The position numbers and the translations under genes are program-made. A DNA stretch of 64,000 nt, taken from positions 217,115 to 281,114 of the IMG/VR virus record IMGVR_UViG_3300036770_008729; one strand, 5' to 3'. The notes below the pieces were generated by a model. The model made no database searches and was not told the origin of the DNA. It saw only the letters and a program-made list of their open reading frames with translations. Below are positions 8,020 to 61,207 of this stretch, piece by piece (within the stretch, counting starts at the first letter, position 1; each line of letters begins with the position of its first letter).

Positions 8020-9221
8020 ATGAAAAGTTCTATAAAAACAAAAAAAGAACATATAGATATAAAGTTCTTAAGAATGAGATTAGAACAATTAATTCATATT
8101 GAAGAATATGAAACTTGTGCAAGAATCCATAAATGGATTGAAGAATTAAAAAAACACCATGATACAATTAAAAACAATCAGAGAAATTGATGATAAAACC
8201 AACGAAGGTAAATTACTGATAGCTGCTCTCGCCATACTTACATCTCTGCAACAAGAAGACATTAAAAATAATATTTGGGGAGGATCGGTCAATCCAGACC
8301 AAGGTTTATCTCAATTGAAAGATTTAGCAAACAAAATCTATTTTGAAAAAGAATGGAAAGCAGAAGAAAAATCCAAAGAAAGGAATAGAAAAATAGAACA
8401 AGTAATAAATGATAGACTTTAATGAACTCAAATTCAAAGATTATAAAACCGTTACATTTAGAGGAATTGATATAGATGTATCTGCTGAATTATTACAAGA
8501 TATAAATGCGGGAACTCAACCACTATCATTACTTGAAAGAATAATAACTCAAGAATACAATAGGTTACTGCCAGTTATAAGAAATAAAAAAATTGACTCT
8601 ATATTAGATGCGACTAATTGATAAGATAGAATCCACGGAATTTCAATTCTTACTTTTTGTATTTGAGCACTATAAAAAATCAAAGAAAAAATACATTAAG
8701 ATAACATCGGATAGAGATTTCAAATTATCATCTCTTCTTCAAAAATCGGATGACTATAATCTAATTGTTACTAAATACAATAATCTAATAAATCTAATCA
8801 ACTCATTAAAAATAGACAATTTGGATATACCAACACTTAACATTGTTGGAAATACAATTGATGAGTTTGATAAGTTAATCTATGAGATATGTTACAAACA
8901 CAAGATTCTAATTGAAGATCCTGATGATTTGCCTTTTTAGTATAGCAAAAAATTGGTTTAAGTGTGGAAAATTATCAAGATAAATTGACATCAAAGAAAT
9001 GGAATATAAATGCTGAAATGGGTTTCATTGAGGTGGGTATAAACTTTTTTATCGGTCTTAAAATACTCAGTATAACTACACATGACATTCAAATTGATTT
9101 CATTTTATTACATTTAGAAACAGAAGAAGGAAAGTTTATTATAGATAGTAAAGATTGGCAAGAAATACAATCAATTCTTAGAACAATAAAAATTGAAGAA
9201 CTATTGAATAAAAAATCATAA
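8020..9221 (+). CDS. Operon of five small ORFs (first UVR-domain-like; three with C-terminal RxxKIxxL tag)
   Basis: EEYETCARI in first ORF; ERNRKIEQVI, IRNKKIDSIL, LRTIKIEELL. Confidence 0.6.
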
Positions 9222-9569
9222 TACCCAGTCTCTCTTAGATTCATCCCATTGCCATCTATCACCACCTGGATGAGGAACCGGTGGTTCCCAAAGACAAGTG
9301 AATTCATTTAATAACCAAGAATCATAAATCTTAGGCGGTATAAATGCATCACGAACCTCATCATAAGTGTAACCAACACCAGCAAAGTTTTTTCTAAATG
9401 GAATACCATTAAGAATATGAACTCCCCCTCTTGTATTATACGAGGTCTTTTTCCAAAAACCTCCTAAAATTTCCGAATATATTTGTTCACCAGTATTCTC
9501 ATATTCATCACCAGCAACAATCACTTGTAAAACCAAACCACTATTATCTATCTGTGCAAAATGTGCCAT
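9216..9569 (-). CDS. Conserved small phage protein (MAHFA...TSYN...FAGxGxTY), partner of Gly-rich protein
   Basis: Paralog of 43320-43676. Confidence 0.7.
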   Translation of the reverse strand: MAHFAQIDNSGLVLQVIVAGDEYENTGEQIYSEILGGFWKKTSYNTRGGVHILNGIPFRKNFAGVGYTYDEVRDAFIPPKIYDSWLLNEFTCLWEPPVPHPGGDRWQWDESKRDWVL

Positions 9570-9584
9570 ATACTATTTTAATAT

Positions 9585-10433
9585 TTATAATCTTATTGTT
9601 CCTGCTCCTGCTTTAAATCTATAAACCCTAAATCCACTTCTTGTTGGTGTATCATATGTTAAACCAACTCCTATTGTTAAAGCAGGATAAATATCAGGAT
9701 AAGCAACAATTACAACACCAGAACCACCATTACCAGACAAACTACCAGCATGTAAATTACCACCACCAGCACCTCCTCCAGTATTAGTCTGACCATTTTT
9801 TGTAGGATCTACAAACGTATCATTTCCAGAACCACCTGTTCCACCACCACCTGTTCCACCTGGACCAGCTCCACCACCACCTCCACCACCAGAGTAGTAA
9901 AGAGTTTGACCGGTGATAGAAGACTGAGTTCCAATACCTCCAACACCACCAACATAGATTATTGTATTATTACCACCAGGTCCACCAGCACCACCACCGC
10001 CACCGCCAGCATTTATAACAGCACTTCCCCCACCAAAACCTTGACCAGGAATTCCACTAGCAGCCGAATATGCTGGTGGACACCAATGAGCACCACCACC
10101 ACCAGAACCACCAGAATTAGCGTTGTAAAGTAAACCAGAACAAGGTGCTCCAGCTCCATAACCTCCACCAGTCGCAGTCAATCCAAAACACCCAGAATTA
10201 CTACCATTAGAAGGAAAAGAACTTCTACTAACACCACCAGACCCACCAGCACCAATACTAACAATGTAGTTTATATCTTTAGTCATTTGAAAACTACCAG
10301 TTCTCAATCCACCAGCACCTCCGCCACCACCAGAACCAGCACCACCACCAGCACCTCCAGCAACAACTAAGTATTCAACTAAAAACTGTACTAGTGTTGG
10401 ATTTCTCAATATACCAATAGTAGATCTAATCAT
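9585..10433 (-). CDS. Glycine-rich putative virion/fibre protein
   Basis: VEYLVVAGGAGGG...GGSGVVIV; paralog of 42473-43315. Confidence 0.7.
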   Translation of the reverse strand: MIRSTIGILRNPTLVQFLVEYLVVAGGAGGGAGSGGGGGAGGLRTGSFQMTKDINYIVSIGAGGSGGVSRSSFPSNGSNSGCFGLTATGGGYGAGAPCSGLLYNANSGGSGGGGAHWCPPAYSAASGIPGQGFGGGSAVINAGGGGGGAGGPGGNNTIIYVGGVGGIGTQSSITGQTLYYSGGGGGGGAGPGGTGGGGTGGSGNDTFVDPTKNGQTNTGGGAGGGNLHAGSLSGNGGSGVVIVAYPDIYPALTIGVGLTYDTPTRSGFRVYRFKAGAGTIRL

Positions 10434-10528: not shown

Positions 10529-11218
10529 ATGAAATCAATTAGAAGACAATTCAGTATTGAATATTTAGGACATAACTACCCTAAACTTACCATTGAAATA
10601 ACTCACTTAAAACTCAGGAAAAAATATCAATTAATAATTGATAACCCTACCATACTCGATAACATAGATAATATTATAAACGACTATCTTTACCAAATAC
10701 AAAAAGACATAAGAGAAGATTTGATAAATAACTTTATATGAAAATCTTCAACATTAATACACAAGAAGGACCAATCTCTGTTAGTGTTAAGTTCTTCCAA
10801 GATTTAACCGAATACGAAATTATGGATTTAGGTGATACCATTTTCATTAAAGACCTTAGAAAAAACCCAATTTCTAAAAGATTTATGTTTAGTATGGCAA
10901 CAACAGAATGGAAAGAAGTTCAAATGGAAATTAGAGATAATAAAATAGAAGACTTGTTAAATGGACATTAGAAAATATTCACTCTACTATTTCGATAAAT
11001 GTAAAAACAACTTACCACACGGTGCAGAACTTGTTTCTATCTCACTAAACGGAAGACCTTATAATAACCAAATACCTCAATTCGGAGATATCGTGACACT
11101 TTACTATAAATATGGAAAAACTAAACTAAATCAATCTAAAAGAGCTCACTTCGAATACATTTGGGGTCAACTACAACAGGAAGATAGAAACAGAAAAATA
11201 GACCAACTATTTGACTAA
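10529..11218 (+). CDS. Three small ORFs with C-terminal tag
   Basis: IREDLINNF, IRDNKIEDLL, DRNRKIDQLF. Confidence 0.6.
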
Positions 11219-13482: not shown

Positions 13483-14151
13483 ATGCCATACCATAACATA
13501 TCAAAAATATCAAAACAACTACTAGATTACTCTTTCTGGCACCTACCAGAAAACTCTAGAAATAAACTATTCACAAACATCAAAAGAATAGACCTAAAAG
13601 AACTATACGCAACCATATACCTCAACCTCTACGATAGGGAAATAATAACTGAACAAACCGAACCACATATATCCACCATAATCCCCTTAATAAGAGAGTG
13701 GAAAGAAACTAAAAACCTAATAGAAGAACAAGAAAGAAAAAAACTAACCTATCAAATAAACTCATCATTCCTTAAACTACAAAATAAATACCTCATTCAC
13801 CAAGTCCTGAAAAACCTTTATACCACCCTAACCAAAGACACCAACATCATATACATCGATACAGATGTTATTTACCTAAATAACACCACCAACGACATAG
13901 TAACAAAACTAAATGGAGTATACGGAAACTACCCCTCTGAACTTAATATAACAGACTTAGACTACCTATACATAATAAGACATAAACTGGTAGCAGAACA
14001 AGGAAAAGGAATAACAAAAACAAATCTAGATAGACTAAGTATACACAGACAAAATAATACAGTAAAGTCTAAGATAATCTCAGATAATAATGACCTAAAA
14101 ACAACCTTTAATATACTTATAAGAGAAGATAAACTAAATAAAATCCTCTAA
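13483..14151 (+). CDS. Small family-B DNA-polymerase-palm-like protein with C-terminal tag
   Basis: DLKELYATI (motif A-like) and IIYIDTD (motif C-like); only 222 aa. Confidence 0.4.
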   Translation: MPYHNISKISKQLLDYSFWHLPENSRNKLFTNIKRIDLKELYATIYLNLYDREIITEQTEPHISTIIPLIREWKETKNLIEEQERKKLTYQINSSFLKLQNKYLIHQVLKNLYTTLTKDTNIIYIDTDVIYLNNTTNDIVTKLNGVYGNYPSELNITDLDYLYIIRHKLVAEQGKGITKTNLDRLSIHRQNNTVKSKIISDNNDLKTTFNILIREDKLNKIL

Positions 14152-14153
14152 CA

Positions 14154-14477
14154 ATGACATCCCAAGAAATCAAACTCTACGGCAGACAAATAGTAGAATC
14201 AATCACCAAAAGCGATATACCATACACCGATATCAATAAATGTAAAGAATTTCATATCGATTTCTCATTTCCAAGCTGGTCAATAGGCAAAGGCACAAAC
14301 CCTAATCATAATATACTCGGACACTCACATATAATACTAACCTGGAACGCAATGCCTCATAAAAAATCCAGCATAATATGGACTAACCTAAAACAAATAA
14401 AAACAACTGAATTAAACTCAATTATAGAAGCAATTAAAAGAGATATAAAATTAAATACAATACTAATCCATAACTAA
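14154..14477 (+). CDS. Hypothetical protein with C-terminal tag
   Basis: KRDIKLNTIL. Confidence 0.55.
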   Translation: MTSQEIKLYGRQIVESITKSDIPYTDINKCKEFHIDFSFPSWSIGKGTNPNHNILGHSHIILTWNAMPHKKSSIIWTNLKQIKTTELNSIIEAIKRDIKLNTILIHN

Positions 14478-15478: not shown

Positions 15479-17092
15479 TTAGTTTAATAAAGGTTTTATT
15501 AGATATATCTTATCTTTTGTTAGTTGCCAAGCTCTAAAGTCAGCTGTTTTTAAGTCCCCAAACCTAAAGAACTTATTATCAACTCCTGGACCCGTAGAAG
15601 GAATAATCGCATAACTCTCATCAAATGTATCAGTCGTATAACTAGTTATAATCATCGGACAATCTGGATGTGATATAATATTAGAATAAGATAAAATTGG
15701 TATTTCTTCACCATTTTCCCCCATCCTCACCCAAGGTATGTCTGCATATGTTTCCCACCAAGTTTGAATATCTTCTATTAATTCAGTAACTACATTTGTA
15801 GTAATGTCGTATTTGCAGAAACTATAATAGGTAACACTATCTACCTCCTTATTTCTTATATAAAAGAAATTTGTACCCGTCATAAAAGAGGTATCTAAGT
15901 AGTCATTAATATCAAAGTTACCTTCAATGAAGTTATCCCATCCAGTATTCAAGTCACTAAACAAACCATAGTCAGCATCATTTACATCTCTTTTATCTAT
16001 AATCTCACTACCAGTTATTACACCATTACCATCTATAATCATTTTAAATCTTACAAAGGTATTTCCAAAATAGTCAGCAGCAACATAAAAAATTGGATAA
16101 TATATAAACTCTATACCATCTTCAATCTTTCTTAAATTGTAACCAAAAGATTGCCAATTTACATCTGGATAAACCGTATCAGTTACATTAAATGTAATGT
16201 CATTGCCGTCAACTGTTATCGAATCACCAATTTTATAATCCTTTCCAGACTCAGAAACATTAACAGTAGTTTCAATTTTATTAACCGTTTGTATAATAAA
16301 ACTAAAGGTACCATTACCAAGATCATTTGTTGTTACCACATCACCTACTAAATAGTAACCATTACCTGATGTTATTATAGGGTTAGGATCAACATAAATC
16401 TCAAAGTTACCATCTACATCAAATGTCACCTCAATTTGAGCTCCTGATCCGGATCCGGTAGTTGATTCAGCATCAAATATTAATGTTTGTCCTGCATATC
16501 CTGCAGGATCAATAAAACTTACAGTGTCTAGGCCAACTGATGTTATTTCGTAAGTTGATATTACTTCCACAACTAATCCTGTTCCTGATCCACCAGTTGT
16601 GTTATAAGTTCCATCTGAGGAAGTTCCAATTACAGGAGTATCTATTGAAATAACTTGTCCATAATCTAAAACATAATCAGATAATTTCAGACCAAGTTCT
16701 TCTATTGGTGAATGTGCGCTTGTAAATACTAACTTATTTCCTTGTTCTTTAAATAAACCCCAAATTAGCGGATATTTATTTATGTCAAAACTCGGATTTG
16801 GAAAAACATTACCTTGTTCTAGTGTTGCCATTCTACAAATATGAAAAGCATCTGAACTCACATCGAATTTACCCCAATACTCATACACATAAATGGATTG
16901 AGTTCCACGTGGAAAATTTTGACTATCACAGATTAGTGTAGTTGATTCAACACTTTTCTCATATGATGCAACTTTATCAGTTGGTGAGTCACTTCTTAAC
17001 GAAATTTCACCCGAGTCATTAAATGAAAAGGAAATATACCCCTCAGGTGGTGTGTTGGATTCACTTTTCTTAAAGAGAAGTCTTTTTGGCAT
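15479..17092 (-). CDS. Putative tail/fibre structural protein
   Basis: GSGTG/GSGSGA and GxxYxVGD repeats; TAATATATA upstream. Confidence 0.55.
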   Translation of the reverse strand: MPKRLLFKKSESNTPPEGYISFSFNDSGEISLRSDSPTDKVASYEKSVESTTLICDSQNFPRGTQSIYVYEYWGKFDVSSDAFHICRMATLEQGNVFPNPSFDINKYPLIWGLFKEQGNKLVFTSAHSPIEELGLKLSDYVLDYGQVISIDTPVIGTSSDGTYNTTGGSGTGLVVEVISTYEITSVGLDTVSFIDPAGYAGQTLIFDAESTTGSGSGAQIEVTFDVDGNFEIYVDPNPIITSGNGYYLVGDVVTTNDLGNGTFSFIIQTVNKIETTVNVSESGKDYKIGDSITVDGNDITFNVTDTVYPDVNWQSFGYNLRKIEDGIEFIYYPIFYVAADYFGNTFVRFKMIIDGNGVITGSEIIDKRDVNDADYGLFSDLNTGWDNFIEGNFDINDYLDTSFMTGTNFFYIRNKEVDSVTYYSFCKYDITTNVVTELIEDIQTWWETYADIPWVRMGENGEEIPILSYSNIISHPDCPMIITSYTTDTFDESYAIIPSTGPGVDNKFFRFGDLKTADFRAWQLTKDKIYLIKPLLN

Positions 17093-17217
17093 TTATAAAA
17101 TTATTTTCTTTATATATTAAGATAAATTAGTTAAATAACTTCAACTACCTAAAATTAAAAGAGAATCAAGCAGATGACCTCTCAGAAACCTCCAATTAAA
17201 ACAAATAAGAATATAAC

Positions 17218-17445
17218 CTATTTAAGCATTATAACACCATTGAAATTTGTAAATGAAGTATCTATCTTTTGATAAGATATCATTGAAATTTCATAAACCA
17301 CTTCATCCTTTGGAATTGATAATTGGCCTTCTAAATCAGAATAATAAACCGATTTATTTGTCCTAACCTCAACCCCAGTTAGTTTTTCTCCTGTTTTGGC
17401 ATCAGTAAATAGAAGATTAAATATTAATGTTAAATAAAGTAGCAT
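17218..17445 (-). CDS. Carboxypeptidase-regulatory-like (SusC N-terminal-like) small protein
   Basis: DAKTGEKLTGV...SDLEG...SMISY. Confidence 0.55.
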   Translation of the reverse strand: MLLYLTLIFNLLFTDAKTGEKLTGVEVRTNKSVYYSDLEGQLSIPKDEVVYEISMISYQKIDTSFTNFNGVIMLK

Positions 17446-17612
17446 AATGCAATGTTAAATTTTTAATTTATATATCATTTTTTTGAAAAAAATCGACATT
17501 TTTTTATTACATTTAATATATAAATAATAATTACTTAACAATTCCATAATATAAAAAATTAAAAAAGGTGATGGTTATTTAAAACAAGTACAAAAATATT
17601 TAAGTTTATAAT

Positions 17613-18338
17613 ATGAAATTAATAGGATTAACAAGAATACGAAATGAATCTGAAATAATACAAGATACATTAGACCATATGTCTACATTTTGTTCAGAAG
17701 TTATAGTATATGATGATTGTAGTACAGATAATACTGTTGAAATATGTGAAAATCATCCTATAGTTAGTAAAATAGTTAAAGGGTTAGAGTGGTCTAATAA
17801 TAGATTTAAAGAAGAATATAGAAATAGACAAGAATTATTTTTAGAAGCAAAAAAAATATTAGAACCAAATGATTGGTTTGTTTATATGGATGCTGATGAA
17901 AGAATAGAATTTGATTGGTCTATATTGAATAATAATATAGACGCTGTAAGAATGAGACTTTTTGATTTTTATATTACAGAAGAAGATAAACATTTAAATT
18001 ATAAAAATCGTAAATGGATGGGACCGGAATATAGAGATATTTTATTTGCATTTAGAATGGGAGCATCTTTAGGATGGTTTTATAATGACCAACGAGAATG
18101 TTCTTTGAGTTCTAATAAAATAATTTTAAGTGGTTTTGTTAAACATTATGGAAAATCAATTTCAATAGAGGAATGGGAAAAAACTTGTAATTATTATTCC
18201 AATCATTTTCCCGAACCTTATAAATCTAAATGGCAAAATAGAAAAGGTAAAGCAATTCACATAAAAAGTGATTTTGATAGACCATTAATAACTTGGGATG
18301 AAAAACAGACATCTGTACATTTATTTAAATTACATTAA
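17613..18338 (+). CDS. GT2-family glycosyltransferase
   Basis: RNE, DDCSTDNT, DADE. Confidence 0.85.
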   Translation: MKLIGLTRIRNESEIIQDTLDHMSTFCSEVIVYDDCSTDNTVEICENHPIVSKIVKGLEWSNNRFKEEYRNRQELFLEAKKILEPNDWFVYMDADERIEFDWSILNNNIDAVRMRLFDFYITEEDKHLNYKNRKWMGPEYRDILFAFRMGASLGWFYNDQRECSLSSNKIILSGFVKHYGKSISIEEWEKTCNYYSNHFPEPYKSKWQNRKGKAIHIKSDFDRPLITWDEKQTSVHLFKLH

Positions 18339-18391
18339 ATAAGAAAAGAATCTTATTAAATGTCAAATTATAAAAAATTAAACATAACACC

Positions 18392-18721
18392 ATGAAAAAA
18401 CTAATCACCATCGCACTCATCTTCAACTTAGGAGTTTGTTTCTCTCAAACACAAAAGGTTGAAAAAAAAGACCAATCTGGTCGAATCGAAGAAACTGGTT
18501 TCCTAAAATCAGGTGTTAGAGATTCCATATGGACTTCTTATTTCTCTGATGGCACAATTAAAGCAATCGCTTACTATAAAGAAGGAGTAAAAGTTGGAAC
18601 TTGGAAAACATTCCACCAAAATGGTAACTCAATGTTTGAAATATCATATTACGAAGGAAGAAAAAAATCCGGCATCCAATACGATGGTTCTGGTAATGTA
18701 GTTGAGAAAAAAGAATGGTAA
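18392..18721 (+). CDS. Secreted MORN-variant repeat protein
   Basis: YKEGVKVGTWKTFHQNG repeats; signal peptide. Confidence 0.75.
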   Translation: MKKLITIALIFNLGVCFSQTQKVEKKDQSGRIEETGFLKSGVRDSIWTSYFSDGTIKAIAYYKEGVKVGTWKTFHQNGNSMFEISYYEGRKKSGIQYDGSGNVVEKKEW

Positions 18722-19461: not shown

Positions 19462-20145
19462 TCATAATCCAAACCTCGACTTAGTTGCGTTATAGTTTTG
19501 TAATACCTCTGATGGTGAAAGTGATCTGTTATATATTTTAAGATTTGGTAAATAACCATTAGTATAATTTGATGAAGTGTTTCTTCCTACAACATAGTTA
19601 GATGTATACATTTGTAAATTTAAAGAACTAGAACCCACTACTGATATGGTTATCTCAACACCATTGAGATATATTTTAGCTACTGAACCAGTTCTAGTAA
19701 AGGACAAATTATACCATTGGTTTGTGTTTAAAGTTGTAGTTGTAGTAGTATAAAAGTAAGTATTATTACTTAAACTTATCTGGAAATAAATATTTCTACT
19801 TCCATCAGTGCCAAATTGATTACTTTTTACATTCGTATCATTATCCAGATTTGAAAAAATTGTAAACCTATTACCGAGCATATAAATCCATGAATCAATT
19901 GTATATGTGTTATTTAATATTGAAGAATTTAATAAAACATAATCATCACTGCCATCAAACACAATACTTCCACCATTAACAGAACTAAATGCAGGAGAAC
20001 CACTCAAAGTTCCATTATTCAAATTTCCACTCAAATCCCTCCATAAAGTTCCCGACCCTGGATAAGAATCCTTTTTACCAGCATCTAAATGTAAAACCAA
20101 TCCATCCCCCACTATACCTCCATAATATGATATCCTTCCTGACAT
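19462..20145 (-). CDS. LamG/ConA-like domain protein
   Basis: LVLHLDAG...SYPGSG...FDGSDDY...YNRSLSPSEV; start reassigned to MSGRI. Confidence 0.8.
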   Translation of the reverse strand: MSGRISYYGGIVGDGLVLHLDAGKKDSYPGSGTLWRDLSGNLNNGTLSGSPAFSSVNGGSIVFDGSDDYVLLNSSILNNTYTIDSWIYMLGNRFTIFSNLDNDTNVKSNQFGTDGSRNIYFQISLSNNTYFYTTTTTTLNTNQWYNLSFTRTGSVAKIYLNGVEITISVVGSSSLNLQMYTSNYVVGRNTSSNYTNGYLPNLKIYNRSLSPSEVLQNYNATKSRFGL

Positions 20146-20217
20146 ATATCTATATATTCCCCAAATAATTGACAACTTCATATAAATAAATCAAAATAAT
20201 AAAGTATATTTATACTA

Positions 20218-21805
20218 ATGAAAATATCCAACAACCAACTAAAAAACAACCCAGAATTCTATCAATTCCTATGCAGAGTATGCGAAGAAACCACCGGCGA
20301 TGTATTATACAATACACACACAGAAATCGACCACATAACAAATGAAGAAGATTACAAAGATAAAACTAAAGCCTTCAGTATAAAATATAGATTAGTCTAT
20401 CTACCTATGAAGAATGACAGTAACGCAGAACAAATTGAATATTCTATATCTAAATCTCATATAATAGATAACCTCAATTGGACCTGGATATACAATATGA
20501 TAGAAAAAGAAGTTAAAATGATACTAAGAGATAATAAACTAAATGAATTAGGAATATGAATTGGCAAAGCTTTAAATGCTCAATATCACTACATAATTGG
20601 GAACATAGTAAAGAAGATATTGAATGGGAAAGTTCTATTGGTAAAAAAATAACCATATCAACAAGTATTAGAATATGCCAAAATTGCCATAAAAAACAAA
20701 GATATTCCGTTCAAGGTTGGGTAGATTGGAATAAATTATCAAAAGAACAATTGAGAGATAAAAAGATTAAACAATTAGGAATATGAAAGTAGTTTGTATA
20801 GATAATGAATTAAAAAGGTCAAGTGAGCTAGTAAAACCAATTAAACTAACAAATCTTACAATTGGTAAGGTATATGAATCACCAATTGTAGGACTACCTG
20901 GTATGTGGTCTATCATTGGTAGGGTCGCCATAACATGTGATGATGGTATTGTAAGAGATTATTCGACTACTAGATTTATTGCATTAGAAGAGTGGAGAGA
21001 AATACAATTAAATAAAATAGGATTACAATGAAACTTAGTGATTGGGAAGAAAAACTAGTCGAAGATATCGATATCATTTTTAGTGGTGGTTATAGTGAAA
21101 ACTTTAACGAAGAACAGATTGAAGAAGTAAAACAACTTTCTTTTCTTCTGAATCATATTGAGTTGAAATATAATTCAGTAGTCTTTTCTTATGATGCTTT
21201 TAACCTTATAGTTAGCGGGATAGAAGAATTACCAAGTGAATGGGCTAAAGAACATATCATACAATGCATTAAAAATTCTGATGAATTTAAGGGAGCTTAC
21301 AAATTATTTGTTCGTGATTTTACAATTGATAAGATTATTAAAAAATGAGGAATAAAATGACTTACTGGATAGAAATTAATATAGATGAAATCTACTTATA
21401 TGGAAAAAAAACTCCACTATTAAAAGACCAACAACTCGAAGTCCAAATGATAAACGGAGAAGCTAAAATAATAATAGACGGAATACCACACAAAAACCTC
21501 CTCCTATTCAAAGATAAAACTTATACCATATCATCACTAATCGGAATGAATTATATCTCCGACATAACTGGACAAATCGAAAGAAATAACAAACTAAATA
21601 AATTAGGAATAGAATGACCAATAATACCTCAATAGTCGATATCAATCCAAATAGATGTCAAATCATAGAAATTATCAATCAACAAGATGATTGGATAGTA
21701 GCTATAGTTAAAGCCAGACTAATAGGTGGCAAACGATGGAAAAAGAGAAAAGTACTCCTAAGTAAATCTGAATTCAGACAAATACAATTAGGTAAATTAG
21801 TATGA
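20218..21805 (+). CDS. Operon of six small ORFs, all ending in the C-terminal tag
   Basis: LRDNKLNELGI, LRDKKIKQLGI, WREIQLNKIGL, VRDFTIDKII, ERNNKLNKLGI, FRQIQLGKLV. Confidence 0.7.
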
Positions 21806-26862: not shown

Positions 26863-27234
26863 TTACAACTCAAATAGTATATTATTTAATTTCATTTCTC
26901 TTATTTTTTCATTTAAGTAAGGTCTTTTAGAAAGCATTGACCATACTGGTCCATAATTGTTAATTAGTGGTTTTGTATGGATTGTGATATCAGATATATT
27001 TAATGTGTAGTCCATTTTTACATAGCCATATCTTTTATCTGCTTTTGCAACACCGGTAGATTCTACTCTGATAAATTCATCAGATATGTTAATAATGTTA
27101 TATTCCCACATATCACCAGCTTCTTCATATCCAGAGTCGTTAGGTATAAACAACCTAAATTGGACTATTGGATCATAAACAAATCCTAGACTGGCAAATA
27201 TATCAATCAGGTCTTTAAGTATTTTATTTTTCAT
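26863..27234 (-). CDS. Hypothetical protein with C-terminal tag
   Basis: IREMKLNNIL. Confidence 0.6.
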   Translation of the reverse strand: MKNKILKDLIDIFASLGFVYDPIVQFRLFIPNDSGYEEAGDMWEYNIINISDEFIRVESTGVAKADKRYGYVKMDYTLNISDITIHTKPLINNYGPVWSMLSKRPYLNEKIREMKLNNILFEL

Positions 27235-38630: not shown

Positions 38631-40698
38631 ATGAAATACATTAAAACATTCGAGAGTTATGATGAATTTCCTGATATGTTTAATAACACACTGATGAGAG
38701 GAGTCAAAACTGATAAAGATGAATATATCGATGATCCTAAGTTGAGAAATATTAACACCGGTGCTTCATCTGATAAAAACTATTTAGAATTCCTGAAGAA
38801 CTATATAAAATTTGGCATTCCTGATCCAACTAAATCAATTCATATGTTTTTTAGACCAAATAGAGATTCAATTGATATGATAAGTTTTTATGGAAATTCA
38901 TATAGAGTAATTCCACAAGAGGGTACCGTATTCGGATTTAATAGAGAGATGAGAAATGGTGGATTGGGTAGTACATGGTTTTATCCACAAAGAACAATAA
39001 AAAAATACTTAGGTAAAGATCTAAATATAGATTTAGAATCAATGAGTAATGATGAGATTACTGAATATCAAAAAATGCTAATTGATAGTGGTGTAGTTGG
39101 TATATTGACTTATGAAGAATTACTTAAAATGTCTACGGAAAAAGGTGAACCTTTACAGGTTTGGACTGAATCACCTTGTTTACATAAAAAAATTTAATCA
39201 AACATATGAAATACATTAAAACATTCGAGAGTTATAATCAATCAGAGAAAGTTGATGAAAATCTTAAATCATTCATCGCTGGTACTCTATTATCATTATC
39301 ATCATTGTTTCCTGGTAAAGCAGATGCTTTTATAGGAGGTGGTGTTTCAGGTGGTCATGTTGTAGCAACAACTAACCATTCAATTAATACTCAAGAGATA
39401 AAGGATGATAGTCAACAGATAAAAGATGATATAACAGATCCAGTATTGAAAGATATAAAAAAATCAATAGATGATGGTATACAATCAAAGGCTGAAATTG
39501 ATAGTATTATAACTAAACTTAAAGCATATGCAGATAAAAACAATTCTCATAGTGATGTTAAAAAAGTATTGGAAGATTTATCTAAAATAGATTTCAATGG
39601 AGATAAAGAAGTAGTAAAAGGTGACTTACTGAAAATAATTATTAAGTTAAATGAAATGCAAAAAAGTGGATCCTTTTCTATTAATGATTTAATGGTCATT
39701 GCTATTTTATTACTTTTTTTAACACTTTTCATTAAATTGATGAATGAAAATGATTAATGGGTAAATGAATATGAAACGAATTAAGAAATTTAATGAAAAT
39801 AATCTGGATTTAGATTATGATTATATCTATAATTGTTTTGCAGAACTTATAGACGATAATAAAGCTTCTATAAGAAATTTTCAAAATGACCATCAAAGAT
39901 ATATTACCATAGATTTAAAGATGAAACCTTTTTCATCAGTTGAGGTAGGCACCAGTTCGAGATTTAATAGAACTCCCGTAGGACCGACTGAAAAGATTAT
40001 CAATTCTAAAATATTTGATTATATAGATGGTGTTAAATACAACTATGATTTACTTAAAGAAGTTGAAGTTGGATTGACGAGATTATCAGAAGAATATCCA
40101 GAGTATATAACTAACTTTGAGATATTTGATAATGTAAACTCAATTCATATTAATATATTTAATAGTTGGAGGACTTACATTAAAGAATAGAGTCTAATTT
40201 CATTTTTCTAAATTCTGATAGCGAAAACAACCCACGCATTTCATCTTCATTTAAGGTAATTGAATATCTACCCTTTTTAGAATTTTGTTCATCTATAATA
40301 CTTTTCATAGCATTCTTTATTAAAGTTAATTAATATTTTTTTTAATATATACATTATAAAATTATATTAAAAATATGAAACATATTAAAAAATTCAATGA
40401 AGGATATCTTAGTGTTTATAATGCTAAACCTATGGAAATAAACGATGCATTTGTAGGGGTTTTGTCAGCATTGGCTACTTTAGAGACTTCTTTAGAAAAA
40501 AGCGAGTTTAAACAAGGAATTCATGATCCAAAAAAAGGAATTGAAGTTCAAAGAACTAAAGAAGAATTCCTTAAGGCTGTCGAAGACATTGCAAAAGAAG
40601 TTGACTCACTTAAATCAGAATATGAAGGATCTCTTGGTAGAGGTGGTACTATGAATGTAGTCGGTAAAGGTGGTGTTTCTCAAACAAGAAGTTATTAA
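38631..40698 (+). CDS. Four N-terminal-tag family proteins (38631-39197, 39206-39757, 39765-40190, 40375-40698)
   Basis: MKYIKTFESY x2, MKRIKKFNE, MKHIKKFNE. Confidence 0.65.
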
Positions 40699-47113: not shown

Positions 47114-47118
47114 CAAAA

Positions 47119-47204: not shown

Positions 47205-47208
47205 CTAA

Positions 47209-47295: not shown

Positions 47296-47371
47296 CATTT
47301 TGATACAATCTATTTTTTTATAATAATTATAATATTATATATACATAACTAAAATAACTTTAGTTTAAATT

Positions 47372-53831: not shown

Positions 53832-54182
53832 TCATAAAATGTTATCTAATTTTTCATCACGCCATTTCGCTATAAGCTCAGGTATCATTTCAAAATCAAC
53901 CCCAAAACTCATTTCTTCTATATCTAACTTTTTAAAGTATTTTAATTTAGAGGCTAAAAAGTCTAATTCAATGCAAACATTGCTTATCACATTTGCACCA
54001 TAGATTTTACTTTTAAGTAGATGTTCAATTTTATTTAAATCTTTTTTATCAGATAAAGTGATTATTGATTCTACTTGACCATGTAAATCTTCTCTGATAC
54101 ATTTTTTTGCCTTTTCAATTAATTCTAATCTTTCCCACCAATCAGGTGAAGGTAAGTCACTGTAGTTGCACCAATCTTCCAT
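53832..54182 (-). CDS. Hypothetical protein with C-terminal tag
   Basis: WRDEKLDNIL. Confidence 0.6.
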   Translation of the reverse strand: MEDWCNYSDLPSPDWWERLELIEKAKKCIREDLHGQVESIITLSDKKDLNKIEHLLKSKIYGANVISNVCIELDFLASKLKYFKKLDIEEMSFGVDFEMIPELIAKWRDEKLDNIL

Positions 54183-55808: not shown

Positions 55809-55919
55809 TAAATAATTTAATACTTAAGTATTTTGTCTAATTTTTTATCTCTTAGTTCATCAGAAGATAAAGAAAAAATTACAGATTAGTTGTTAATAAA
55901 TTTTATCAATTTGGTGATA

Positions 55920-56958: not shown

Positions 56959-57600
56959 TTAAATAAAATTATAATAATTGAATAAGTTTATAGATGGTGA
57001 TGTATAAGTAGTTCCTGCTAATCCTTGAGCACCTTGTGGTCCTTGAACACCCTGACTACCAGTTGGACCTGCAGGACCCTGTGGACCAATTGACCCCTGA
57101 ACACCTTGTGGCCCTTGTGGACCTTGAGAACCTTGTGAAGATAACAATGCCCATCCGATAGTATCTTCATAAGGAGTGCTTGTTGTTGCCGTTGAAATTG
57201 TAGCAATACAAAACCAAGAAGAACCACTAAATCCAACAGCATCATTCACACTATATGTTGATGATGATGTCCATGCTCCCTGCCAATAAAGACCCGCTGG
57301 TCCTACCGGACCTTGTGTTCCTTGAGCACCTTGTGGACCTTGAACACCATTTGGTCCAGTTGGACCTGCTTCTCCTTGTGGACCAGCTATACCCTGTACA
57401 CCTTGAGCACCTTGTGGACCTTGAGGTCCAGCAGGTCCGGTTGGACCAGTAGCGCCACCTCCCCCACCACCTCCACCTTGAACCTCTCTATATTCACCGT
57501 TCTCAAGTATGGTTATGTTATCATTTAGTATACCAATAGCACTATATCCAGGTGCAATTGACCCAGTAAGTCCACTATTTTTAAATATTATTTTTCTCAT
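56959..57600 (-). CDS. Collagen triple-helix repeat protein
   Basis: Two long G-X-Y runs (GPQ/GPT/GAQ). Confidence 0.85.
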
Positions 57601-57662: not shown

Positions 57663-57923
57663 ATGAAATATTTAAAATTATTTGAGGATTTTGAAGAAGG
57701 AGCTGAAGTCGAAATCCATGATGAACCATCAGGAGATACTGATGATGTAAAGGTAAAAGGTCATGATTTGACTATTGCTCAATTGAAGCAACAAGGATTT
57801 GTAATCGGGAGCTTTGCATGTGAAGATGGTGAAGTTGTTATGATCAACGGAATGGAAGCTGACGAATGGTTAGATAACCAAGGACCTATGGAAGGAACAG
57901 AAGAAAGTCCAGATAATTATTAA
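57663..57923 (+). CDS. Acidic N-terminal-tag family protein
   Basis: MKYLKLFEDF; TAATATATA 57650-57658. Confidence 0.6.
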   Translation: MKYLKLFEDFEEGAEVEIHDEPSGDTDDVKVKGHDLTIAQLKQQGFVIGSFACEDGEVVMINGMEADEWLDNQGPMEGTEESPDNY

Positions 57924-58436
57924 TTCCTATCTGAAAATTTTGATACTATTCCTGCGATAAGTACCACAACAGGTACTATTATTGCTACTATTTGTTCTGT
58001 ATTCATACTACAAATATAAGCACAGAAATTTAATTTTCCAAATTTATTATTTGATTTATTAAACATGATTCTATATTAATTAGAAGTTAATAAAAAAGAT
58101 ATATAAAATAAAAAGTATTACTATGACAGAAGAATTACCAACAATCAAATTTTTAGAAGATAAAATTATTACAACTAAAGATGGTGTTGTAGAAGTTTGG
58201 AGTAGATGGAACGGAGACGAATCAAAATTTATCGTCTATCAAGGAATAAGATATAAGTTATCAAGAACAAAAGAAGCCTCTCAATAATGAGAGGTTTTTT
58301 CATGATAAGATGATGTAAATAAAAAATGCTAATACGATATAAAAAATAGTTTTTGCGAAGAAAGTACATTCATCAGAATTTCTATTTGTAATGCTTTTAA
58401 TAATATTTTTCATAGCACAAATATAATAAAATTTTT

Positions 58437-60375
58437 TTATATAATGAATTTTCTAATTGCTCTTACAGAAATAGCTAGTGATGATAGTGTCGATACCGTT
58501 TTTGTAGCAACTGTTCCCAATGAATTATCAACTCTATAAATAAGGGCACGTGTGTCAAACTCTGTACTAGTCCAATAATATGGCCTAGCTCTTAAGTCGA
58601 AAGAGACTCCCCCAGCATCTTCAATTCCTTGTGAAACATGAAAAAGATTATTTGTCATTGTTTCAAATTCTTGTGAGGATGGTAAATACCAATCTGTTTT
58701 CCCATTTCTGGAACTATCTAAGCAAAGTTGAGCAGCCGATTGAGTGTGTCCAACTTGTTGTGTAATAGCAACCGAATTACTTAAGCCATTGAATAAACTC
58801 TGAGCACTTACTCCTATGACAGATGTTGTTCCTGACCATCTTGTACCAACTGCTAAATTATCAGTATCAACCACTAAGTAATGTTGTCTACTATTCTCAA
58901 TCCATCTTTCGCAGATTACACCACCCTCATCAGGTACCCACTGACCAATTTCATACTTGAAGTCTAATAATGTGGTTTCGTTACCTACTTTTGTAGATAG
59001 AACACCAGATGTTGCTCCTAATACTACAAATCCAATTGGACTCTTCGAGTCAAGACCGCCATTTTGTATGTATATTTTTGTAATCATTTATATGACTAAT
59101 TTTCTTATTGCTCTGACTCTATAGCTAAGACTTTTTAAGTTACCAAATGAATCTGTAATTCTAGATCGATAGTACATTGCATAGTTTGTAAAATCATATT
59201 CCGTACTTGTCCAGTATGCATTAGGTGGTTCGAAAGCAGTTGCTCCAATACTTTCAAGTGTTCTAGAAACTTCAAACATATTAACTAAAAGTAAATCAAA
59301 TTCTTTCAAAGAAGGCAAATACCAATCATTTTTTCCATTATTTGTAGAGTTTAGACAAAGACTCGCCGCTGATGTTGAATGACCAACTTGATTGATTACA
59401 GCGACTGAATTGCTCATCCCATTCCAAACACTTTGAGCAGATGATCCGATAGTAGTAGAAACATTACTCCAGACGGTTCCAGAAGATATATCAGATGTGT
59501 CTACAATCAGATAACTTTGTGAAGCACCTGATAACCATCTATAGTAGACAATTCCACCCTCTGATGGTAAATAGTCACCTATCTCGTATGTAAATCTAAA
59601 TACTCTGGTATTACCAGTCACTAATAATTGACTACTGGTTGCTGTAATAGATATCAGACCTTGATTTGAATCGGAATAATTTGAATTATTAATATACAGT
59701 CTACTCATATTAAATGCTAAATTTTCTTACAGCCCTCACAAGTTGTTTATTTGATTTACTGACAAGACTATTAAAGAATCCAGAAAAAAATGAATGACTA
59801 TAGGCCTGAGTAGCAGTTTGTTCAGTACTGCTCCAATGTCCAATATTTGGATTGAATGCTGAGGCACCAGCAGCTACAACACCTTGACTCACATGAAAAT
59901 AATTTATCCATATCTTATTCATTTCAAATATAGCTGGTAAATACCAATCATTCTTACCACCATTCGTGCTCGTATCACAAAGATAAGCCGCACCACTAAC
60001 ATCACCCTGATTTAACATAGCAACTGAATTAGATGGTCCATTCCAAAGACTCTGTGATGTAGTTCCTATCAGAGAAGATGTTACGGAGCTAAAACTTGCA
60101 GATCCACCAAGATATCCAGTATCAACAACCAAATACCATTGCTTTGAGTCTTCGACCCATCTATGAAAAATTATACCACCTTCATCAGAAACCCATTGTC
60201 CTATTTTGTATGTAAATTGAACATCTGCATTTCCAATTGGAGCATCTACTATAGTAGTTGTTACTAATTCAGTTGAATTCTGAATAGCTAAGTTACTTCC
60301 AGTGGAGGTAATTAAAATACCATTAGGTAACGAAGTACTATTGAGTCCAGTTCTTAGAAATATTCTTTTAGGCAT
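58437..60375 (-). CDS. Three tandem DUF1566/Lcl-type paralogs (58437-59087, 59088-59708, 59710-60375)
   Basis: YxIG...GG...DWYLP...W(T/S)STE...VRA(I/V)RK. Confidence 0.75.
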
Positions 60376-60606
60376 AATCTATATATTAAAAACTTATTGA
60401 AAAATTTTTCTATATATATATGTATGTATAAATTGCTAATCTAAAATTAGTAACCCTATAGTAAGAATAGGGAGTATCTCAGAATAGATCTTACCTCTCT
60501 TTCTGTTTCGCACTAACATCGAGCGAGTTGTTTTGGTTTAAAAATCTAAAACTGCCTTCTTTCAAAAAGGTACTCAAAGTGAGAACGAATCGATGTTTTT
60601 TATTAG

Positions 60607-61207
60607 ATGATAATATTCAATACTATAAAACAAGCCGAGCACTATGTTAAATGGTGTCAAAAAAACATGGACTATAATGTTGGTCATTATGAGTGGAGAT
60701 CTCAAACTACTTATATAAAGGATAATCTAGTCCTACAAAACAACAGTGGTGATAGTTGTGGGTGTGGTTGTGATAATGGTAAATATAGTGATATAATAGT
60801 ATTGGGTAGAATAAAGTCGTATAATACTAAAACGATTAGAGATAGAAAAATGATTCAAATTTTAGATAAATAAATTTGAAAATACTTTGACTTTCCAAAA
60901 AAAGCCTTATATTTGTATAAGGAAATAATAACTAAAAAATAAAATTATGAAAACAAAAATTTTCAACTTTTACTTAGGAAATTATAAATCAATTCATCAT
61001 TTGATAACTATATCAATGATGTTTTCATTTATGTGTTTCATAGATTCGTTAATTGTGAAGTTACCTCTTTTCGAACCTACTATTGACTCTTTCTTATTCA
61101 ATTTTATTTTACTTTTCCTTTCTTATAAAGTAACTAATTTCACTTTAGATAAATCTGGATTAGATGCTCAAATTCAAAAAGAGATCAAAAAAAAACAGAC
61201 AATATAA
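60607..61207 (+). CDS. Two small ORFs (60607-60873 with C-terminal tag; 60947-61207 membrane)
   Basis: IRDRKMIQIL; two TM segments. Confidence 0.55.

What the first reader, a model, noticed from the sequence alone, without database searches (positions are those of the whole stretch)
8159..60873. About 18 small unrelated proteins share a C-terminal R(D/N/E)xK(L/I)xx(L/I) tag
Clusters at 8159-9221, 10529-11218, 13483-14477, 20218-21805 (six in a row), plus 26863, 53832, 60607, and an orphan LRDKKLDKIL remnant near 55816-55860. It does not co-occur with the N-terminal tag in this window. Inference: a short amphipathic docking helix, degron or localisation signal for a shared partner.
Basis: partly seen in the sequence, partly recalled or inferred. 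Interest (0 to 1): 0.65.

Follow-up and report, generated by a model that had tools for sequence, protein, structure and literature searches.

The report
Shared C-terminal helix tag in huge phage
About one gene in ten of this huge Bacteroidota-type phage, mostly tiny proteins of unknown function, ends in the same short helix (R-D/N/E-x-K-I/L-x-x-I/L-L); it behaves like a portable address label for a shared partner that has not been identified.

Summary
The window holds 18 ORFs with the tail (10 strict, 8 variant) plus one start-less remnant. The 281-kb record holds 44-48 such genes out of about 400. Strict matches at C-termini number 30, against 0.09-0.15 in shuffles.

Conservation is at the protein level. 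Codons vary, orthologues keep the tail through synonymous changes, the downstream DNA differs, and 27% of tagged genes have no co-directional downstream gene. The protein bodies are unrelated by BLAST, HHalign and Pfam.

The tail is an N-capped helix of about 13 residues. R0, K3 and the hydrophobic residues at +4, +7 and +8 lie on one face. AlphaFold models it as a helix of low confidence, set off from a well-modelled body in one of two models.

The tail is lineage-specific. It occurs in related huge phages, with 62 hits in the 642-kb LR756502.1. One distant relative has its own dialect (RKx[KI]I[END][END]LL). Another relative and 301 Bacteroidota-type genomes lack it.

It never co-occurs with the N-terminal MKYLKLFE-type tag. 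Tagged genes also avoid the TTAATATATA promoter-like motif that precedes N-tagged genes.

Best reading: a modular docking helix for one conserved receptor. Candidate receptors are the phage's own ClpC-type unfoldase and chaperones, or a replisome clamp, since one member is a mini family-B polymerase. The receptor is unproven.

The parts
8159..8422 (+). 87-aa ORF, variant tail ERNRKIEQVINDRL (R0..+8 at 8381-8407)
8409..8621 (+). 70-aa ORF, strict tail IRNKKIDSILDATN (8580-8606). The G001 orthologue keeps the tail at 29% body identity.
9018..9221 (+). 67-aa ORF (85 aa from GTG at 8964), variant tail LRTIKIEELLNKKS (9180-9206)
10529..10741 (+). 70-aa ORF, degenerate tail IREDLINNFI (Lys replaced by Leu); weakest member
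10738..10971 (+). 77-aa ORF, strict tail EIRDNKIEDLLNGH (10933-10959)
10961..11218 (+). 85-aa ORF, strict tail EDRNRKIDQLFD (11186-11212)
13483..14151 (+). 222-aa tagged protein with a miniature family-B DNA-polymerase palm/fingers fold (motifs A, B and C conserved). Tail IREDKLNKIL (14122-14148).
   Evidence: alignment A4; AF2 model; Foldseek and VIA-align top hits are family-B polymerases
14154..14477 (+). 107-aa ORF, strict tail IKRDIKLNTILIHN (14439-14465)
20218..20559 (+). 113-aa ORFan, first gene of the six-gene array, tail LRDNKLNELGI (20527-20553). Its stop overlaps the next start (ATGA).
20556..20786 (+). 76-aa ORF, strict tail LRDKKIKQLGI (20754-20780)
20783..21031 (+). 82-aa ORF, variant tail WREIQLNKIGLQ (Gln at +3)
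21028..21348 (+). 106-aa ORF, variant tail VRDFTIDKIIKK (Thr at +3)
21345..21617 (+). 90-aa ORF, strict tail ERNNKLNKLGIE (21582-21608)
21614..21805 (+). 63-aa ORF, variant tail FRQIQLGKLV, last gene of the array
26863..27234 (-). 123-aa ORF, strict tail IREMKLNNILFEL (26875-26901)
40180..40308 (-).
53832..54182 (-). 116-aa ORF, strict tail WRDEKLDNIL (53835-53861)
55816..55885 (-). Start-less remnant: 21 open codons after a stop, ending DELRDKKLDKILKY*. It is the 3' end of a lost tagged gene.
60607..60873 (+). 88-aa ORF, variant tail IRDRKMIQILDK (Met at +4); its G001 orthologue ends IRGNKLKQIIGF

Best explanation
The tail is a self-contained amphipathic alpha-helix of about 13 residues, added to the C-terminus of 9-12% of the proteins of a lineage of T4-related huge phages. 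These are relatives of the 634-642-kb Mahaphage genomes, and the host is probably in the Bacteroidota.

Shown:
- It is selected as a peptide, not as DNA.
- It starts with a helix-capping box ([ST]-x-x-E) and often ends with a Gly cap.
- R0, K3, hydrophobic +4, +7, +8 and hydrophobic -1 lie on a single helical face.
- It sits on unrelated, mostly small (median about 95 aa) proteins with no recognised domain.
- These proteins belong to a different regulatory class from the N-tagged genes.

Inferred: the tail works as a portable docking peptide. It tethers many different phage proteins, whose variable bodies would carry their individual activities, to one conserved receptor through that face.

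The most concrete candidate receptor, which is unproven, is the phage's own protein-quality-control machinery. This comprises a ClpC-type double-ring unfoldase that lacks the usual N-domain but keeps a ClpP-docking VGF loop, ClpP genes in the larger relatives, and a DnaK/DnaJ/GrpE operon that has two tagged genes embedded in it. On that reading the tail would be an adaptor handle or a degron for that machine. I give about 0.5 to a docking peptide for a common receptor, and about 0.2 within that to the Clp/chaperone receptor.
For: - C-terminal enrichment: 30 observed against 0.09-0.15 in shuffles.
- Codon diversity at R0 (AGA, CGT, AGG, CGA) and at the I/L positions, with unconserved downstream DNA.
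- Orthologues at 26-64% body identity keep the tail. At the conserved positions 17 codons changed synonymously.
- Arg at position 0 is almost never replaced by Lys at C-termini (4 against 90), although K[DNE]xK[LI]xx[LI] is common internally (20). Position +1 is D/E/N in 79% of unbiased matches.
- AF2, family A2: body pLDDT 88-97, then a break at residues 125-129 and a tail helix at 130-142 with pLDDT 52-58. AF2, family A4: a helix spans the tail, also at low confidence.
- Bodies are unrelated: BLAST E > 0.03; HHalign probability at most 2.8%; 2 weak Pfam hits among 89 tagged proteins.
- The tail is lineage-specific. Tail-profile hits (E <= 0.1): 62 in LR756502.1, 27 in G001, 20 in G002, 1 in G003 and 0 in G004. 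G003 instead carries its own dialect, which keeps R0 and hydrophobic +4, +7, +8, on 74 of 600 genes. G004 has 3 of 320.
- 301 Bacteroidota-type genomes (the class of a Flavobacteriales MAG) give only chance-level hits: 5 at E <= 0.01 against about 3 expected.
- Regulatory split: the AATATATA motif lies upstream of 0 of 48 C-tagged genes (p = 6.5e-6) and 27 of 55 N-tagged genes (p = 5.6e-7).
- Receptor candidates: the ClpC-like ATPase is the most conserved protein of the clade at 82-93% identity and has a VGF loop at residue 555. ClpP genes are present in W01 and G001. GrpE, two tagged genes and DnaJ form one operon. The ATPase, DnaK and an M28 peptidase are among only 17 genes shared by all four tail-bearing genomes and missing from tail-less G004.
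Against: - No receptor has been demonstrated. The one complex prediction (ATPase plus tail segment) gave no answer.
- The ClpC-like ATPase is far more widespread than the tail. Loci whose ATPase is 58-63% identical carry no tails (2 of 1107 genes), so the ATPase is at best necessary, not sufficient.
- ClpP was not found in G000, G002 or G003.
- The phyletic profile rests on a single tail-less genome.
- The 'non-late' label is inferred only from a promoter-like motif. No transcript data exist for this phage.
- In G003 many tagged genes are obvious tandem paralogues. Shared descent therefore explains part of the sharing there, and could explain it in G000 if the bodies have diverged beyond recognition.
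Confidence: 0.5

Rival explanations
1. Clamp- or processivity-factor-binding tail. As in T4, where gp43, gp33 and gp55 share an interchangeable C-terminal clamp-binding epitope, the tail would plug into the phage's or host's sliding clamp and bring many proteins to replicating DNA.
For: One tagged protein (window 13483-14151) is a miniature family-B polymerase palm with conserved motifs A, B and C. The phage is T4-related, with topoisomerase II subunits, gp32 and a baseplate wedge protein. T4 precedent for freely interchangeable C-terminal clamp-binding motifs on unrelated proteins joined by a flexible linker: PMC2988020. The hydrophobic spacing h-x-x-h-h is the same as in PIP boxes (from my own knowledge).
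Against: No gp45-type or beta-type clamp domain was found in G000, G001, G002, LR756502.1 or G004, nor a gp45-type one in G003. These phages are so divergent that this is weak evidence. The T4 epitope is hydrophobic and acidic, whereas this tail has invariant Arg and Lys and is predicted helical. Only 1 of about 90 tagged proteins looks replisome-related. Forty or more clamp partners per genome would be unprecedented for a phage.
Confidence: 0.12
2. Relic of common descent. The tagged genes would be a fast-evolving multigene family spread by tandem duplication. The C-terminal helix would be the only part still recognisable, serving as an intrinsic structural element of each protein rather than a handle for a shared partner.
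For: Tagged genes lie in tandem arrays. In G003 many are clear paralogues, with runs of about 141-aa and about 80-aa proteins. Some G000 members share extra residues upstream of the core, such as EW[KR]EIQ and S-x-x-E-F.
Against: There is no BLAST or HHalign similarity between bodies in G000. Lengths range from 42 to 250 aa. Two members have quite different predicted folds, one an alpha/beta domain and one a PolB-like palm. In the better of the two models the tail is set off from the body, and in both it has low confidence. Even under common descent, the strict retention of one helical face implies a conserved interaction.
Confidence: 0.1
3. Tail-to-tail oligomerisation. The helices would bundle with one another and assemble tagged proteins into homo- or hetero-oligomers.
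For: The tail is an amphipathic helix with complementary charges (R0 and K3 against D/E at +1 and +5). Tagged genes sit in the same arrays and so are probably expressed together.
Against: Thirteen residues is short for a stable coiled coil. Arg would sit at a core position.
Confidence: 0.07
4. Virion-packaging signal. The tail would bind the inside of the procapsid or a scaffold, so that tagged proteins are packaged and injected. The concept matches encapsulin cargo-loading peptides or the T4 capsid-targeting sequence.
For: Huge capsids carry many internal proteins. C-terminal cargo peptides that bind HK97-fold shells are known (from my own knowledge). A basic-plus-hydrophobic face would suit an acidic shell interior.
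Against: Tagged genes never follow the T4-late-like TTAATATATA motif that precedes the one recognisable structural module (the baseplate wedge genes), several very large ORFs and half of the N-tagged genes. The N-terminal tag is the better candidate for a capsid-targeting sequence.
Confidence: 0.07
5. Membrane-targeting amphipathic helix of the MinD or FtsA type.
For: It is a short C-terminal amphipathic helix with basic residues flanking a hydrophobic stripe.
Against: Arg and Lys are not interchangeable at position 0 (4 against 90). An acidic or amide residue is conserved at +1. Net charge is near zero and there are only three or four aliphatic residues. Membrane binding would not demand this specificity.
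Confidence: 0.04
6. Nucleic-acid-level signal. The A-rich codons at gene ends would really be a translation-initiation, coupling or recombination element for the next gene, and the peptide would be a by-product.
For: 43% of tagged genes overlap or abut the next start. The ...LG[IL]* endings coincide with GGAATATGA stop-start overlaps.
Against: Codons vary while residues stay. The distance to the stop varies from 0 to 9 codons. 27% of tagged genes are the last gene of their unit and 30% have a gap of more than 15 nt, much like untagged small genes. The downstream sequence is not conserved.
Confidence: 0.02

Closest known systems
T4-family C-terminal sliding-clamp-binding epitopes of gp43, gp33 and gp55
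   Same: A short, interchangeable peptide at the extreme C-terminus of unrelated phage proteins. It is joined to the body by a divergent linker and docks all of them on one hub (PMC2988020). The present phage is T4-related, and one tagged protein is polymerase-like.
   Different: The T4 epitope is hydrophobic and acidic and sits on three known replication and transcription proteins. Here the peptide is a capped helix with invariant Arg and Lys. It sits on 40-70 mostly tiny ORFan proteins per genome, and no clamp gene could be recognised.
Adaptor and degron tags of AAA+ proteases (SspB C-terminal ClpX-binding peptide, ssrA and MuA-type C-terminal degrons, MecA-type and phospho-Arg recognition by ClpC, and the SPO1 Gp53 adaptor-like protein)
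   Same: Short terminal peptides that deliver diverse proteins to one unfoldase. A phage early protein acting on ClpC is documented (PMC6873191). This phage lineage encodes its own ClpC-type ATPase with a VGF loop, and ClpP in the larger genomes.
   Different: The tail is not at a fixed distance from the free C-terminus, with 0-9 residues following it. It has no LAA- or RRKKAI-like sequence. The phage ATPase lacks the N-domain that binds adaptors and phospho-Arg in ClpC. Binding was not shown.
PIP-box and other hub-binding short linear motifs
   Same: Terminal position and the h-x-x-h-h hydrophobic spacing. Many unrelated carriers share one receptor.
   Different: There is no Gln. The hydrophobic residues are aliphatic rather than aromatic. 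The polar anchor lies one residue further from the hydrophobic core, and the setting is bacterial and viral.
Encapsulin cargo-loading peptides and the T4 capsid-targeting sequence
   Same: A portable terminal peptide that sorts unrelated proteins to one destination in an HK97-type system.
   Different: Cargo-loading peptides are Gly/Ser-rich and extended. The T4 sequence is N-terminal and cleaved. The present tail avoids the late-like promoter class.

Membership tests
T4-type clamp-binding C-terminal epitope | Short peptide at the extreme C-terminus, connected to the body by a divergent flexible linker | tested here: met
   The tail lies 0-9 residues from the stop. In the AF2 model a break and low pLDDT separate it from the body.
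T4-type clamp-binding C-terminal epitope | Hydrophobic and acidic composition without conserved basic residues | tested here: not met
   Arg at 0 is fixed and hardly replaceable by Lys (4 against 90). Lys at +3 is the rule, with Arg or Gln in about a dozen tails. The T4 description is taken from PMC2988020.
T4-type clamp-binding C-terminal epitope | A gp45-type (or beta-type) clamp encoded by or available to the phage | tested here: inconclusive
   PF02916 and PF00712 found nothing in G000, G001, G002, LR756502.1 or G004; PF02916 alone was also run on G003, with the same result. The major capsid, tail sheath and prohead-protease families were also invisible in G000, so sensitivity is poor.
T4-type clamp-binding C-terminal epitope | Carried by the DNA polymerase and the late-transcription factors | tested here: inconclusive
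   A 222-aa PolB-like palm protein carries the tail. No gp33 or gp55 homologues were identified. One sigma-70-family protein (G000 149159-149770) has no tail.
PIP-box or bacterial beta-clamp-binding motif | Qxx[ILM]xx[FY][FY] or QL[SD]LF consensus | tested here: not met
   The position table of 90 tails shows no Gln anchor and I/L rather than F/Y. Only the h-x-x-h-h spacing is shared.
ssrA-type or MuA-type C-terminal ClpX degron | Recognition of the last residues together with the free carboxylate (fixed register, LAA or RRKKAI-like) | tested here: not met
   A variable 0-9 residues of unrelated sequence follow the motif. The degron consensus is from my own knowledge.
MinD/FtsA-type membrane-targeting sequence | Amphipathic terminal helix with net positive charge, in which Lys and Arg are interchangeable | tested here: not met
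   Lys at position 0 is found in 4 C-terminal tails against 90 with Arg. D/E/N at +1 in 79% of matches.
Pfam helical motifs that resemble the tail (UVR, Rho_N, SAP/HeH) | A significant profile match | tested here: not met
   Of 89 tagged proteins, one weak UVR hit (E = 5.8e-4) and no Rho_N or SAP hit.
Type IX secretion C-terminal domain (Bacteroidota) | N-terminal signal peptide plus a beta-sandwich C-terminal domain of about 80 aa | tested here: not met
   Tagged proteins show no T9SS C-terminal-domain family match. By eye, the N-termini listed show no signal peptide. The conserved part is only about 13 residues.
Encapsulin cargo-loading peptide | Gly/Ser/Leu-rich extended C-terminal peptide that binds the inside of an HK97-fold shell | not testable with these tools
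   The composition differs. Shell binding cannot be tested, and the capsid gene was not recognisable.

The most novel reading that the evidence does not exclude
Huge Mahaphage-type phages run a proteome-wide two-label addressing system. About 10% of genes carry the C-terminal helix tag and about 14% carry the N-terminal MKYLKLFE-type tag, the two are mutually exclusive, and they fall in different promoter classes. The C-tag would be the handle by which a phage-encoded, N-domain-less ClpC/ClpP (or Hsp70) machine recognises a large set of fast-evolving adaptor or effector proteins. Such a machine could clear early proteins on schedule, or use them to feed host targets into a viral protease. The lineage dialects (RDxKIxxIL against RKxKIEELL) would reflect helix-stabilising changes around one conserved receptor-binding face.
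Probability: 0.15. Interest if true: 0.9.

Novelty: new variant of a known kind. Interest (0 to 1): 0.72.

Why it matters
Huge phages are made mostly of small genes with no recognisable function. A single peptide shared by a tenth of those genes gives them a common experimental handle. One pull-down with the tail could name the receptor and assign a pathway to 40-70 unknown proteins per genome across a whole clade.

If the receptor is the phage's own Clp or Hsp70 machinery, this would be a virus-encoded substrate-targeting code for regulated proteolysis or remodelling in bacteria. If it is a clamp, it would be a large expansion of the T4 'toolbelt' principle.

The tag is also a practical marker. 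It separates a regulatory class of genes, and its dialects mark lineages of huge phages in metagenomes. It could serve as a portable tag in Bacteroidota phage biology.

Tried and rejected
- Pfam and PHROGs on ten window members found nothing significant. Pfam on 89 tagged proteins of three genomes gave two weak hits.
- Word search for the 113-aa member found only itself. ESM Atlas look-alikes for the 77-aa member gave no usable lead.
- Foldseek of the A2 family body found no match.
- BLAST and HHalign between bodies found no relation. Two larger HHalign runs timed out.
- Complex prediction of the ClpC-like ATPase (alignment A5) with residues 100-143 of family A2 gave 'no answer', score 0.00. 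It is not evidence either way.
- Clamp families PF02916 and PF00712 were not found. PolB family PF00136, major capsid protein, tail sheath and prohead protease families were not found in G000. The lineage is too divergent for these models, so the absences mean little.
- PHROGs on ten genes preceded by the TTAATATATA motif gave no functional names, so calling that motif 'late' remains an inference.
- The first phyletic profile (present in G001 and G002, absent in G003 and G004) gave 56 candidates. It was flawed because G003 does carry a tail dialect. It was redone with G004 as the only negative, giving 17 candidates.
- Tail-profile search of five Bacteroidota genomes, then of 301, gave chance-level hits. 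Host-motif mimicry is therefore unlikely.
- No RNA sequencing run holds this phage, so read laying was not used and expression timing is untested.
- Literature searches for a described motif of this kind in jumbo or huge phages found nothing.
- The large representative-protein search was not used. A profile of about 20 bits cannot reach significance against 1.8 billion proteins.

Full report
**What the sequence is.** The window is the last 64 kb of a 281,114-bp IMG/VR virus record. The record has 30% G+C, and the window holds 23 tRNA genes. Proteins identical to window proteins lie on a 598,435-bp contig elsewhere, so the record is probably part of a genome of about 600 kb.

The phage is T4-related. 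It has topoisomerase II large and medium subunits, a baseplate wedge protein and gp32. Its nearest public records are the unannotated 'uncultured phage' genomes LR756502.1 (642,428 bp) and LR745206.1 (634,780 bp), with 69-71% identity in the topoisomerase. Their sizes match the 642- and 634-kb Mahaphage genomes, which are predicted to replicate in Bacteroidetes (PMC7162821). This link is an inference from size.

Three further observations fit a Bacteroidota host. A host-like epimerase gene is closest to Flavobacteriales and other Bacteroidota MAGs. TAnnTTTG-type promoter-like motifs occur upstream of genes. By eye, several large ORFs begin with what look like Bacteroidota-type signal peptides ending ...SQ. 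The DNA comes from subsurface and freshwater metagenomes.

**The observation.** The strict pattern R[DNE]xK[LI]xx[LI] occurs 16 times in the six-frame translation of the window, and 11 of these lie 1-5 residues before a stop. In the whole record 31 of 37 strict matches in ORFs lie within 7 residues of the C-terminus. Among 400 non-overlapping gene calls there are 30 C-terminal matches. Whole-protein shuffles give 0.085, and shuffles of only the last 30 residues give 0.148.

With variants allowed, the window has 18 tail-bearing ORFs plus one remnant without a start codon. One listed ORF (8608-8940) lacks the tail, and one extra member (40180-40308, minus strand) was found.

**Protein signal or DNA signal.** The signal is in the protein.
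- Arg is encoded by AGA, CGT, AGG and CGA.
- The I/L positions use six different codons.
- The stop lies 0-9 codons after the motif.
- The DNA after the stop is not conserved.
- Eleven orthologous tail pairs between this genome and two relatives show, at the conserved positions, 27 identical codons, 17 synonymous changes and 11 residue changes, mostly I/L swaps.
- Orthologues with 26-64% identity in the body keep the tail.
- Tagged genes are no more often followed by an abutting gene than untagged small genes, and 27% are the last gene of their unit.

A translation-coupling or promoter element therefore cannot explain the motif. The ...LG[IL]* endings do coincide with ATGA stop-start overlaps.

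**Anatomy of the tail.** The position table of 90 strict tails from three genomes gives: hydrophobic residue at -1; Arg at 0; D/E/N at +1; Lys at +3; I/L at +4; N/D/K/E at +5; I/L at +7; L/G/I/F at +8. In many members a capping box S/T-x-x-E lies just upstream. When +8 is Gly, +9 is I or L.

On a helical wheel, residues -1, 0, +3, +4, +7 and +8 span one face. Positions +1 and +5 lie on the other side.

Arg at position 0 is specific. Lys occurs there in 4 C-terminal tails against 90 with Arg, although the Lys version of the pattern is common internally.

The AlphaFold model of a 143-aa member, built on 19 sequences, has a body at pLDDT 88-97. A break follows at residues 125-129, and then a tail helix at 130-142 with pLDDT 52-58. 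The 222-aa member also ends in a low-confidence helix. Both models fit an appended, mobile helix.

**The carriers.** Tagged proteins have a median length of about 95 aa (range 42-250). They show no BLAST or HHalign similarity to each other outside the tail. They are almost devoid of known domains, with 2 weak Pfam hits in 89 proteins.

The exception is window 13483-14151. Its family alignment shows polymerase motifs A (D-x-x-E-L-Y-A), B (K-I-N-S-x-Y) and C (Y-I-D-T-D), plus KKRY in one orthologue. Its model matches family-B DNA polymerases almost exclusively. Foldseek gives Pol alpha with probability 0.99, E = 9e-3 and TMq 0.45. VIA-align gives Z = 7.9-5.2 for 13 of the top 15 hits, including RB69 gp43 and phi29 polymerase. 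The scores are middling, but the family is consistent and the catalytic motifs are conserved.

**Distribution.** A tail profile (alignment A1) finds 62 hits in LR756502.1, 27 in a 483-kb relative (G001), 20 in a 385-kb relative (G002), 1 in G003 and 0 in G004.

De novo mining of C-terminal patterns then showed that G003 (348 kb, topoisomerase only 45% identical) has its own dialect, R-K-x-[K/I]-I-[E/N/D]-[E/N/D]-L-[L/I]. It occurs on 74 of 600 genes, usually as the very last residues, and many carriers lie in tandem paralogue arrays. G004 (246 kb, topoisomerase 58% identical) really lacks the tail, with 3 of 320 genes.

The two dialects keep R0 and the hydrophobic residues at +4, +7 and +8. 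They swap the charges at +1 and +5, which form an i/i+4 pair on the opposite side of the helix. This looks like helix-stabilising change around one conserved binding face, which is an inference.

In 301 genomes of the class of a Flavobacteriales MAG the profile gives chance-level hits. The tail is therefore not a copy of a common host motif.

**Two tags, two gene classes.** Fifty-five genes start with MK[YH][IL]K.[FY]..., and none of them has the C-tail (p = 0.0011).

An AT-only motif, TTAATATATA[ACG], lies 4-7 or 17-28 nt before 89 start codons. It precedes 27 of 55 N-tagged genes and 0 of 48 C-tagged genes. Walking upstream along each transcription unit, N-tagged genes reach this motif in 47 of 55 cases and C-tagged genes in 1 of 44.

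The motif resembles the T4 late promoter in being a short AT-only box, and it sits in front of the baseplate module. It also precedes some non-structural genes. 'Late' is therefore an inference, and no RNA data are available.

**Candidate receptors.** The most conserved protein of the clade (82-93% identity) is a 722-aa ClpC/ClpB-type double AAA+ unfoldase. It has a UVR motif in its middle domain and no Clp_N domain, and a VGF loop lies at the position of the ClpP-docking loop.

ClpP genes are present in LR756502.1 (three) and G001 (two). None was found in G000, G002 or G003.

The phage also encodes DnaK, and it has an operon in the order: 161-aa unknown protein, GrpE, two C-tagged genes, DnaJ. 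The synteny is conserved in G001 and G002.

Only 17 G000 genes are shared by all four tail-bearing genomes and absent from G004. They include the ATPase, DnaK, an M28 peptidase, a NusG homologue and two kinases. This makes a proteostasis receptor attractive.

The evidence is circumstantial, for three reasons. The ATPase is far more widespread than the tail. The profile has one negative genome. The one complex prediction gave no answer.

The polymerase-like member, together with the T4 precedent of interchangeable C-terminal clamp-binding motifs (PMC2988020), keeps a clamp receptor alive. No clamp gene could be recognised.

**Verdict.** It is a clade-wide, protein-level, C-terminal helix tag on about a tenth of the genes of Mahaphage-type huge phages, with lineage dialects. 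It is mutually exclusive with an N-terminal tag and confined to a different regulatory class.

The most likely mechanism is a portable docking helix for one conserved receptor (about 0.5). Within that reading, the leading guess is an adaptor or degron role for the phage's own Clp/Hsp70 machinery (about 0.2). A clamp-binding role comes next (about 0.12).

I found no description of this motif in Pfam, PHROGs or the searchable literature. It fails the defining features of the known terminal motifs it resembles. I therefore file it as a new variant of a known kind, namely hub-binding terminal peptides.

Noticed in passing
window-wide, e.g. 2247-3881(+), 34488-35009(+), 38631-39757(+), 47372-47917(+), 57663-57923(+), 61896-62492(+); 55 genes in the 281-kb record: An N-terminal tag MK[YH][IL]K.[FY](E/N).. 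(for example MKYLKLFEDF, MKYIKTFESY, MKHIKKFNE) sits on larger proteins (median 188 aa). It is also present in G001-G004, including the tail-less G004. From memory it resembles the T4 capsid-targeting sequence, and some copies contain an L-x-E site. It is never combined with the C-tail.
   Followed up: partly
89 sites in G000; in the window e.g. upstream of 551, 9585-10433(-), 15479-17092(-), 25182-26492(-), 34488, 36650, 40375, 61896: The promoter-like motif TTAATATATA[ACG] lies at a fixed 4-7 nt or 17-28 nt before start codons. The 4-7 nt class would give nearly leaderless mRNAs. It is enriched before N-tagged genes, several very large ORFs and the baseplate genes, and absent before C-tagged genes.
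   Followed up: partly
window 13483-14151 (+): A 222-aa miniature family-B DNA-polymerase palm/fingers protein with motifs A, B and C conserved but no exonuclease or N-terminal domain. PF00136 does not detect any PolB in the 281-kb record.
   Followed up: partly
G000 27826-29994 (locus L003:7826-9994); G000 75819-78694 and 82408-84273 (L005, L006): A phage proteostasis set: a ClpC-type unfoldase without an N-domain but with a VGF loop; DnaK; an operon of a 161-aa unknown protein, GrpE, two C-tagged genes and DnaJ; and an M28 peptidase at 17205-18479. ClpP genes occur in G001 and LR756502.1.
   Followed up: partly
whole record: Proteins identical to window proteins are recorded on a 598,435-bp contig, so the 281-kb 'provirus' record (CheckV completeness 94%) is probably less than half of the real genome. 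The tyrosine integrase at window 28726-29526(-), next to a tRNA-Phe with the odd anticodon AAA (28560-28636), may have prompted the provirus call.
   Followed up: no
window 40906-47296: A cluster of 22 tRNA genes on both strands, which raises the local G+C to 34-36%.
   Followed up: no
window 9216-10433(-) and 42473-43676(+): An inverted duplicate gene pair: a glycine-rich protein of about 280 aa (MIRST..., GGAGGG runs) followed by a protein of about 117 aa (MAHFA...). LamG-like proteins ending ...VLQNYNATKSRFGL lie at 19462-20181(-) and 41716-42393(+).
   Followed up: no
window 21809-22444(-), 58437-60375(-), 56959-57600(-): A paralogous family of proteins of about 210 aa that end ...R(A/V)(V/I)RKF(S/I/V)I. 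This is another shared C-terminal ending, here on clearly related bodies.
   Followed up: no
G003 (loci L115-L132), e.g. 246277-251082(-), 258185-262065(+), 279718-282499(+): Tandem arrays of paralogues of about 141 aa and about 80 aa that carry the dialect tail RKxKIE(E/N)LL as their last residues. They show how tagged gene families expand.
   Followed up: partly
G004 (loci L057-L069), 13 genes e.g. 25687-26259, 89200-91001: A multigene family that combines the N-terminal tag MKHIKLFEQFIS with a conserved C-terminal ...KKFTEEEVRxVIDVKGKVYV. It is unrelated to the helix tail.
   Followed up: no
G000 71100-71140 (L005): A further tagged mini-ORF ending ...RNDKLEELGI* overlaps the start of gene 71139. 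My 40-aa ORF threshold missed it, so the counts of tagged genes are lower bounds.
   Followed up: no
G000 58927-59460, 97414-97965, 149159-149770, 148491-149153: An Acb1-like 2H phosphodiesterase (anti-CBASS family), a NusG homologue, a sigma-70-family protein, and a stand-alone PolB-type 3'-5' exonuclease domain protein.
   Followed up: no
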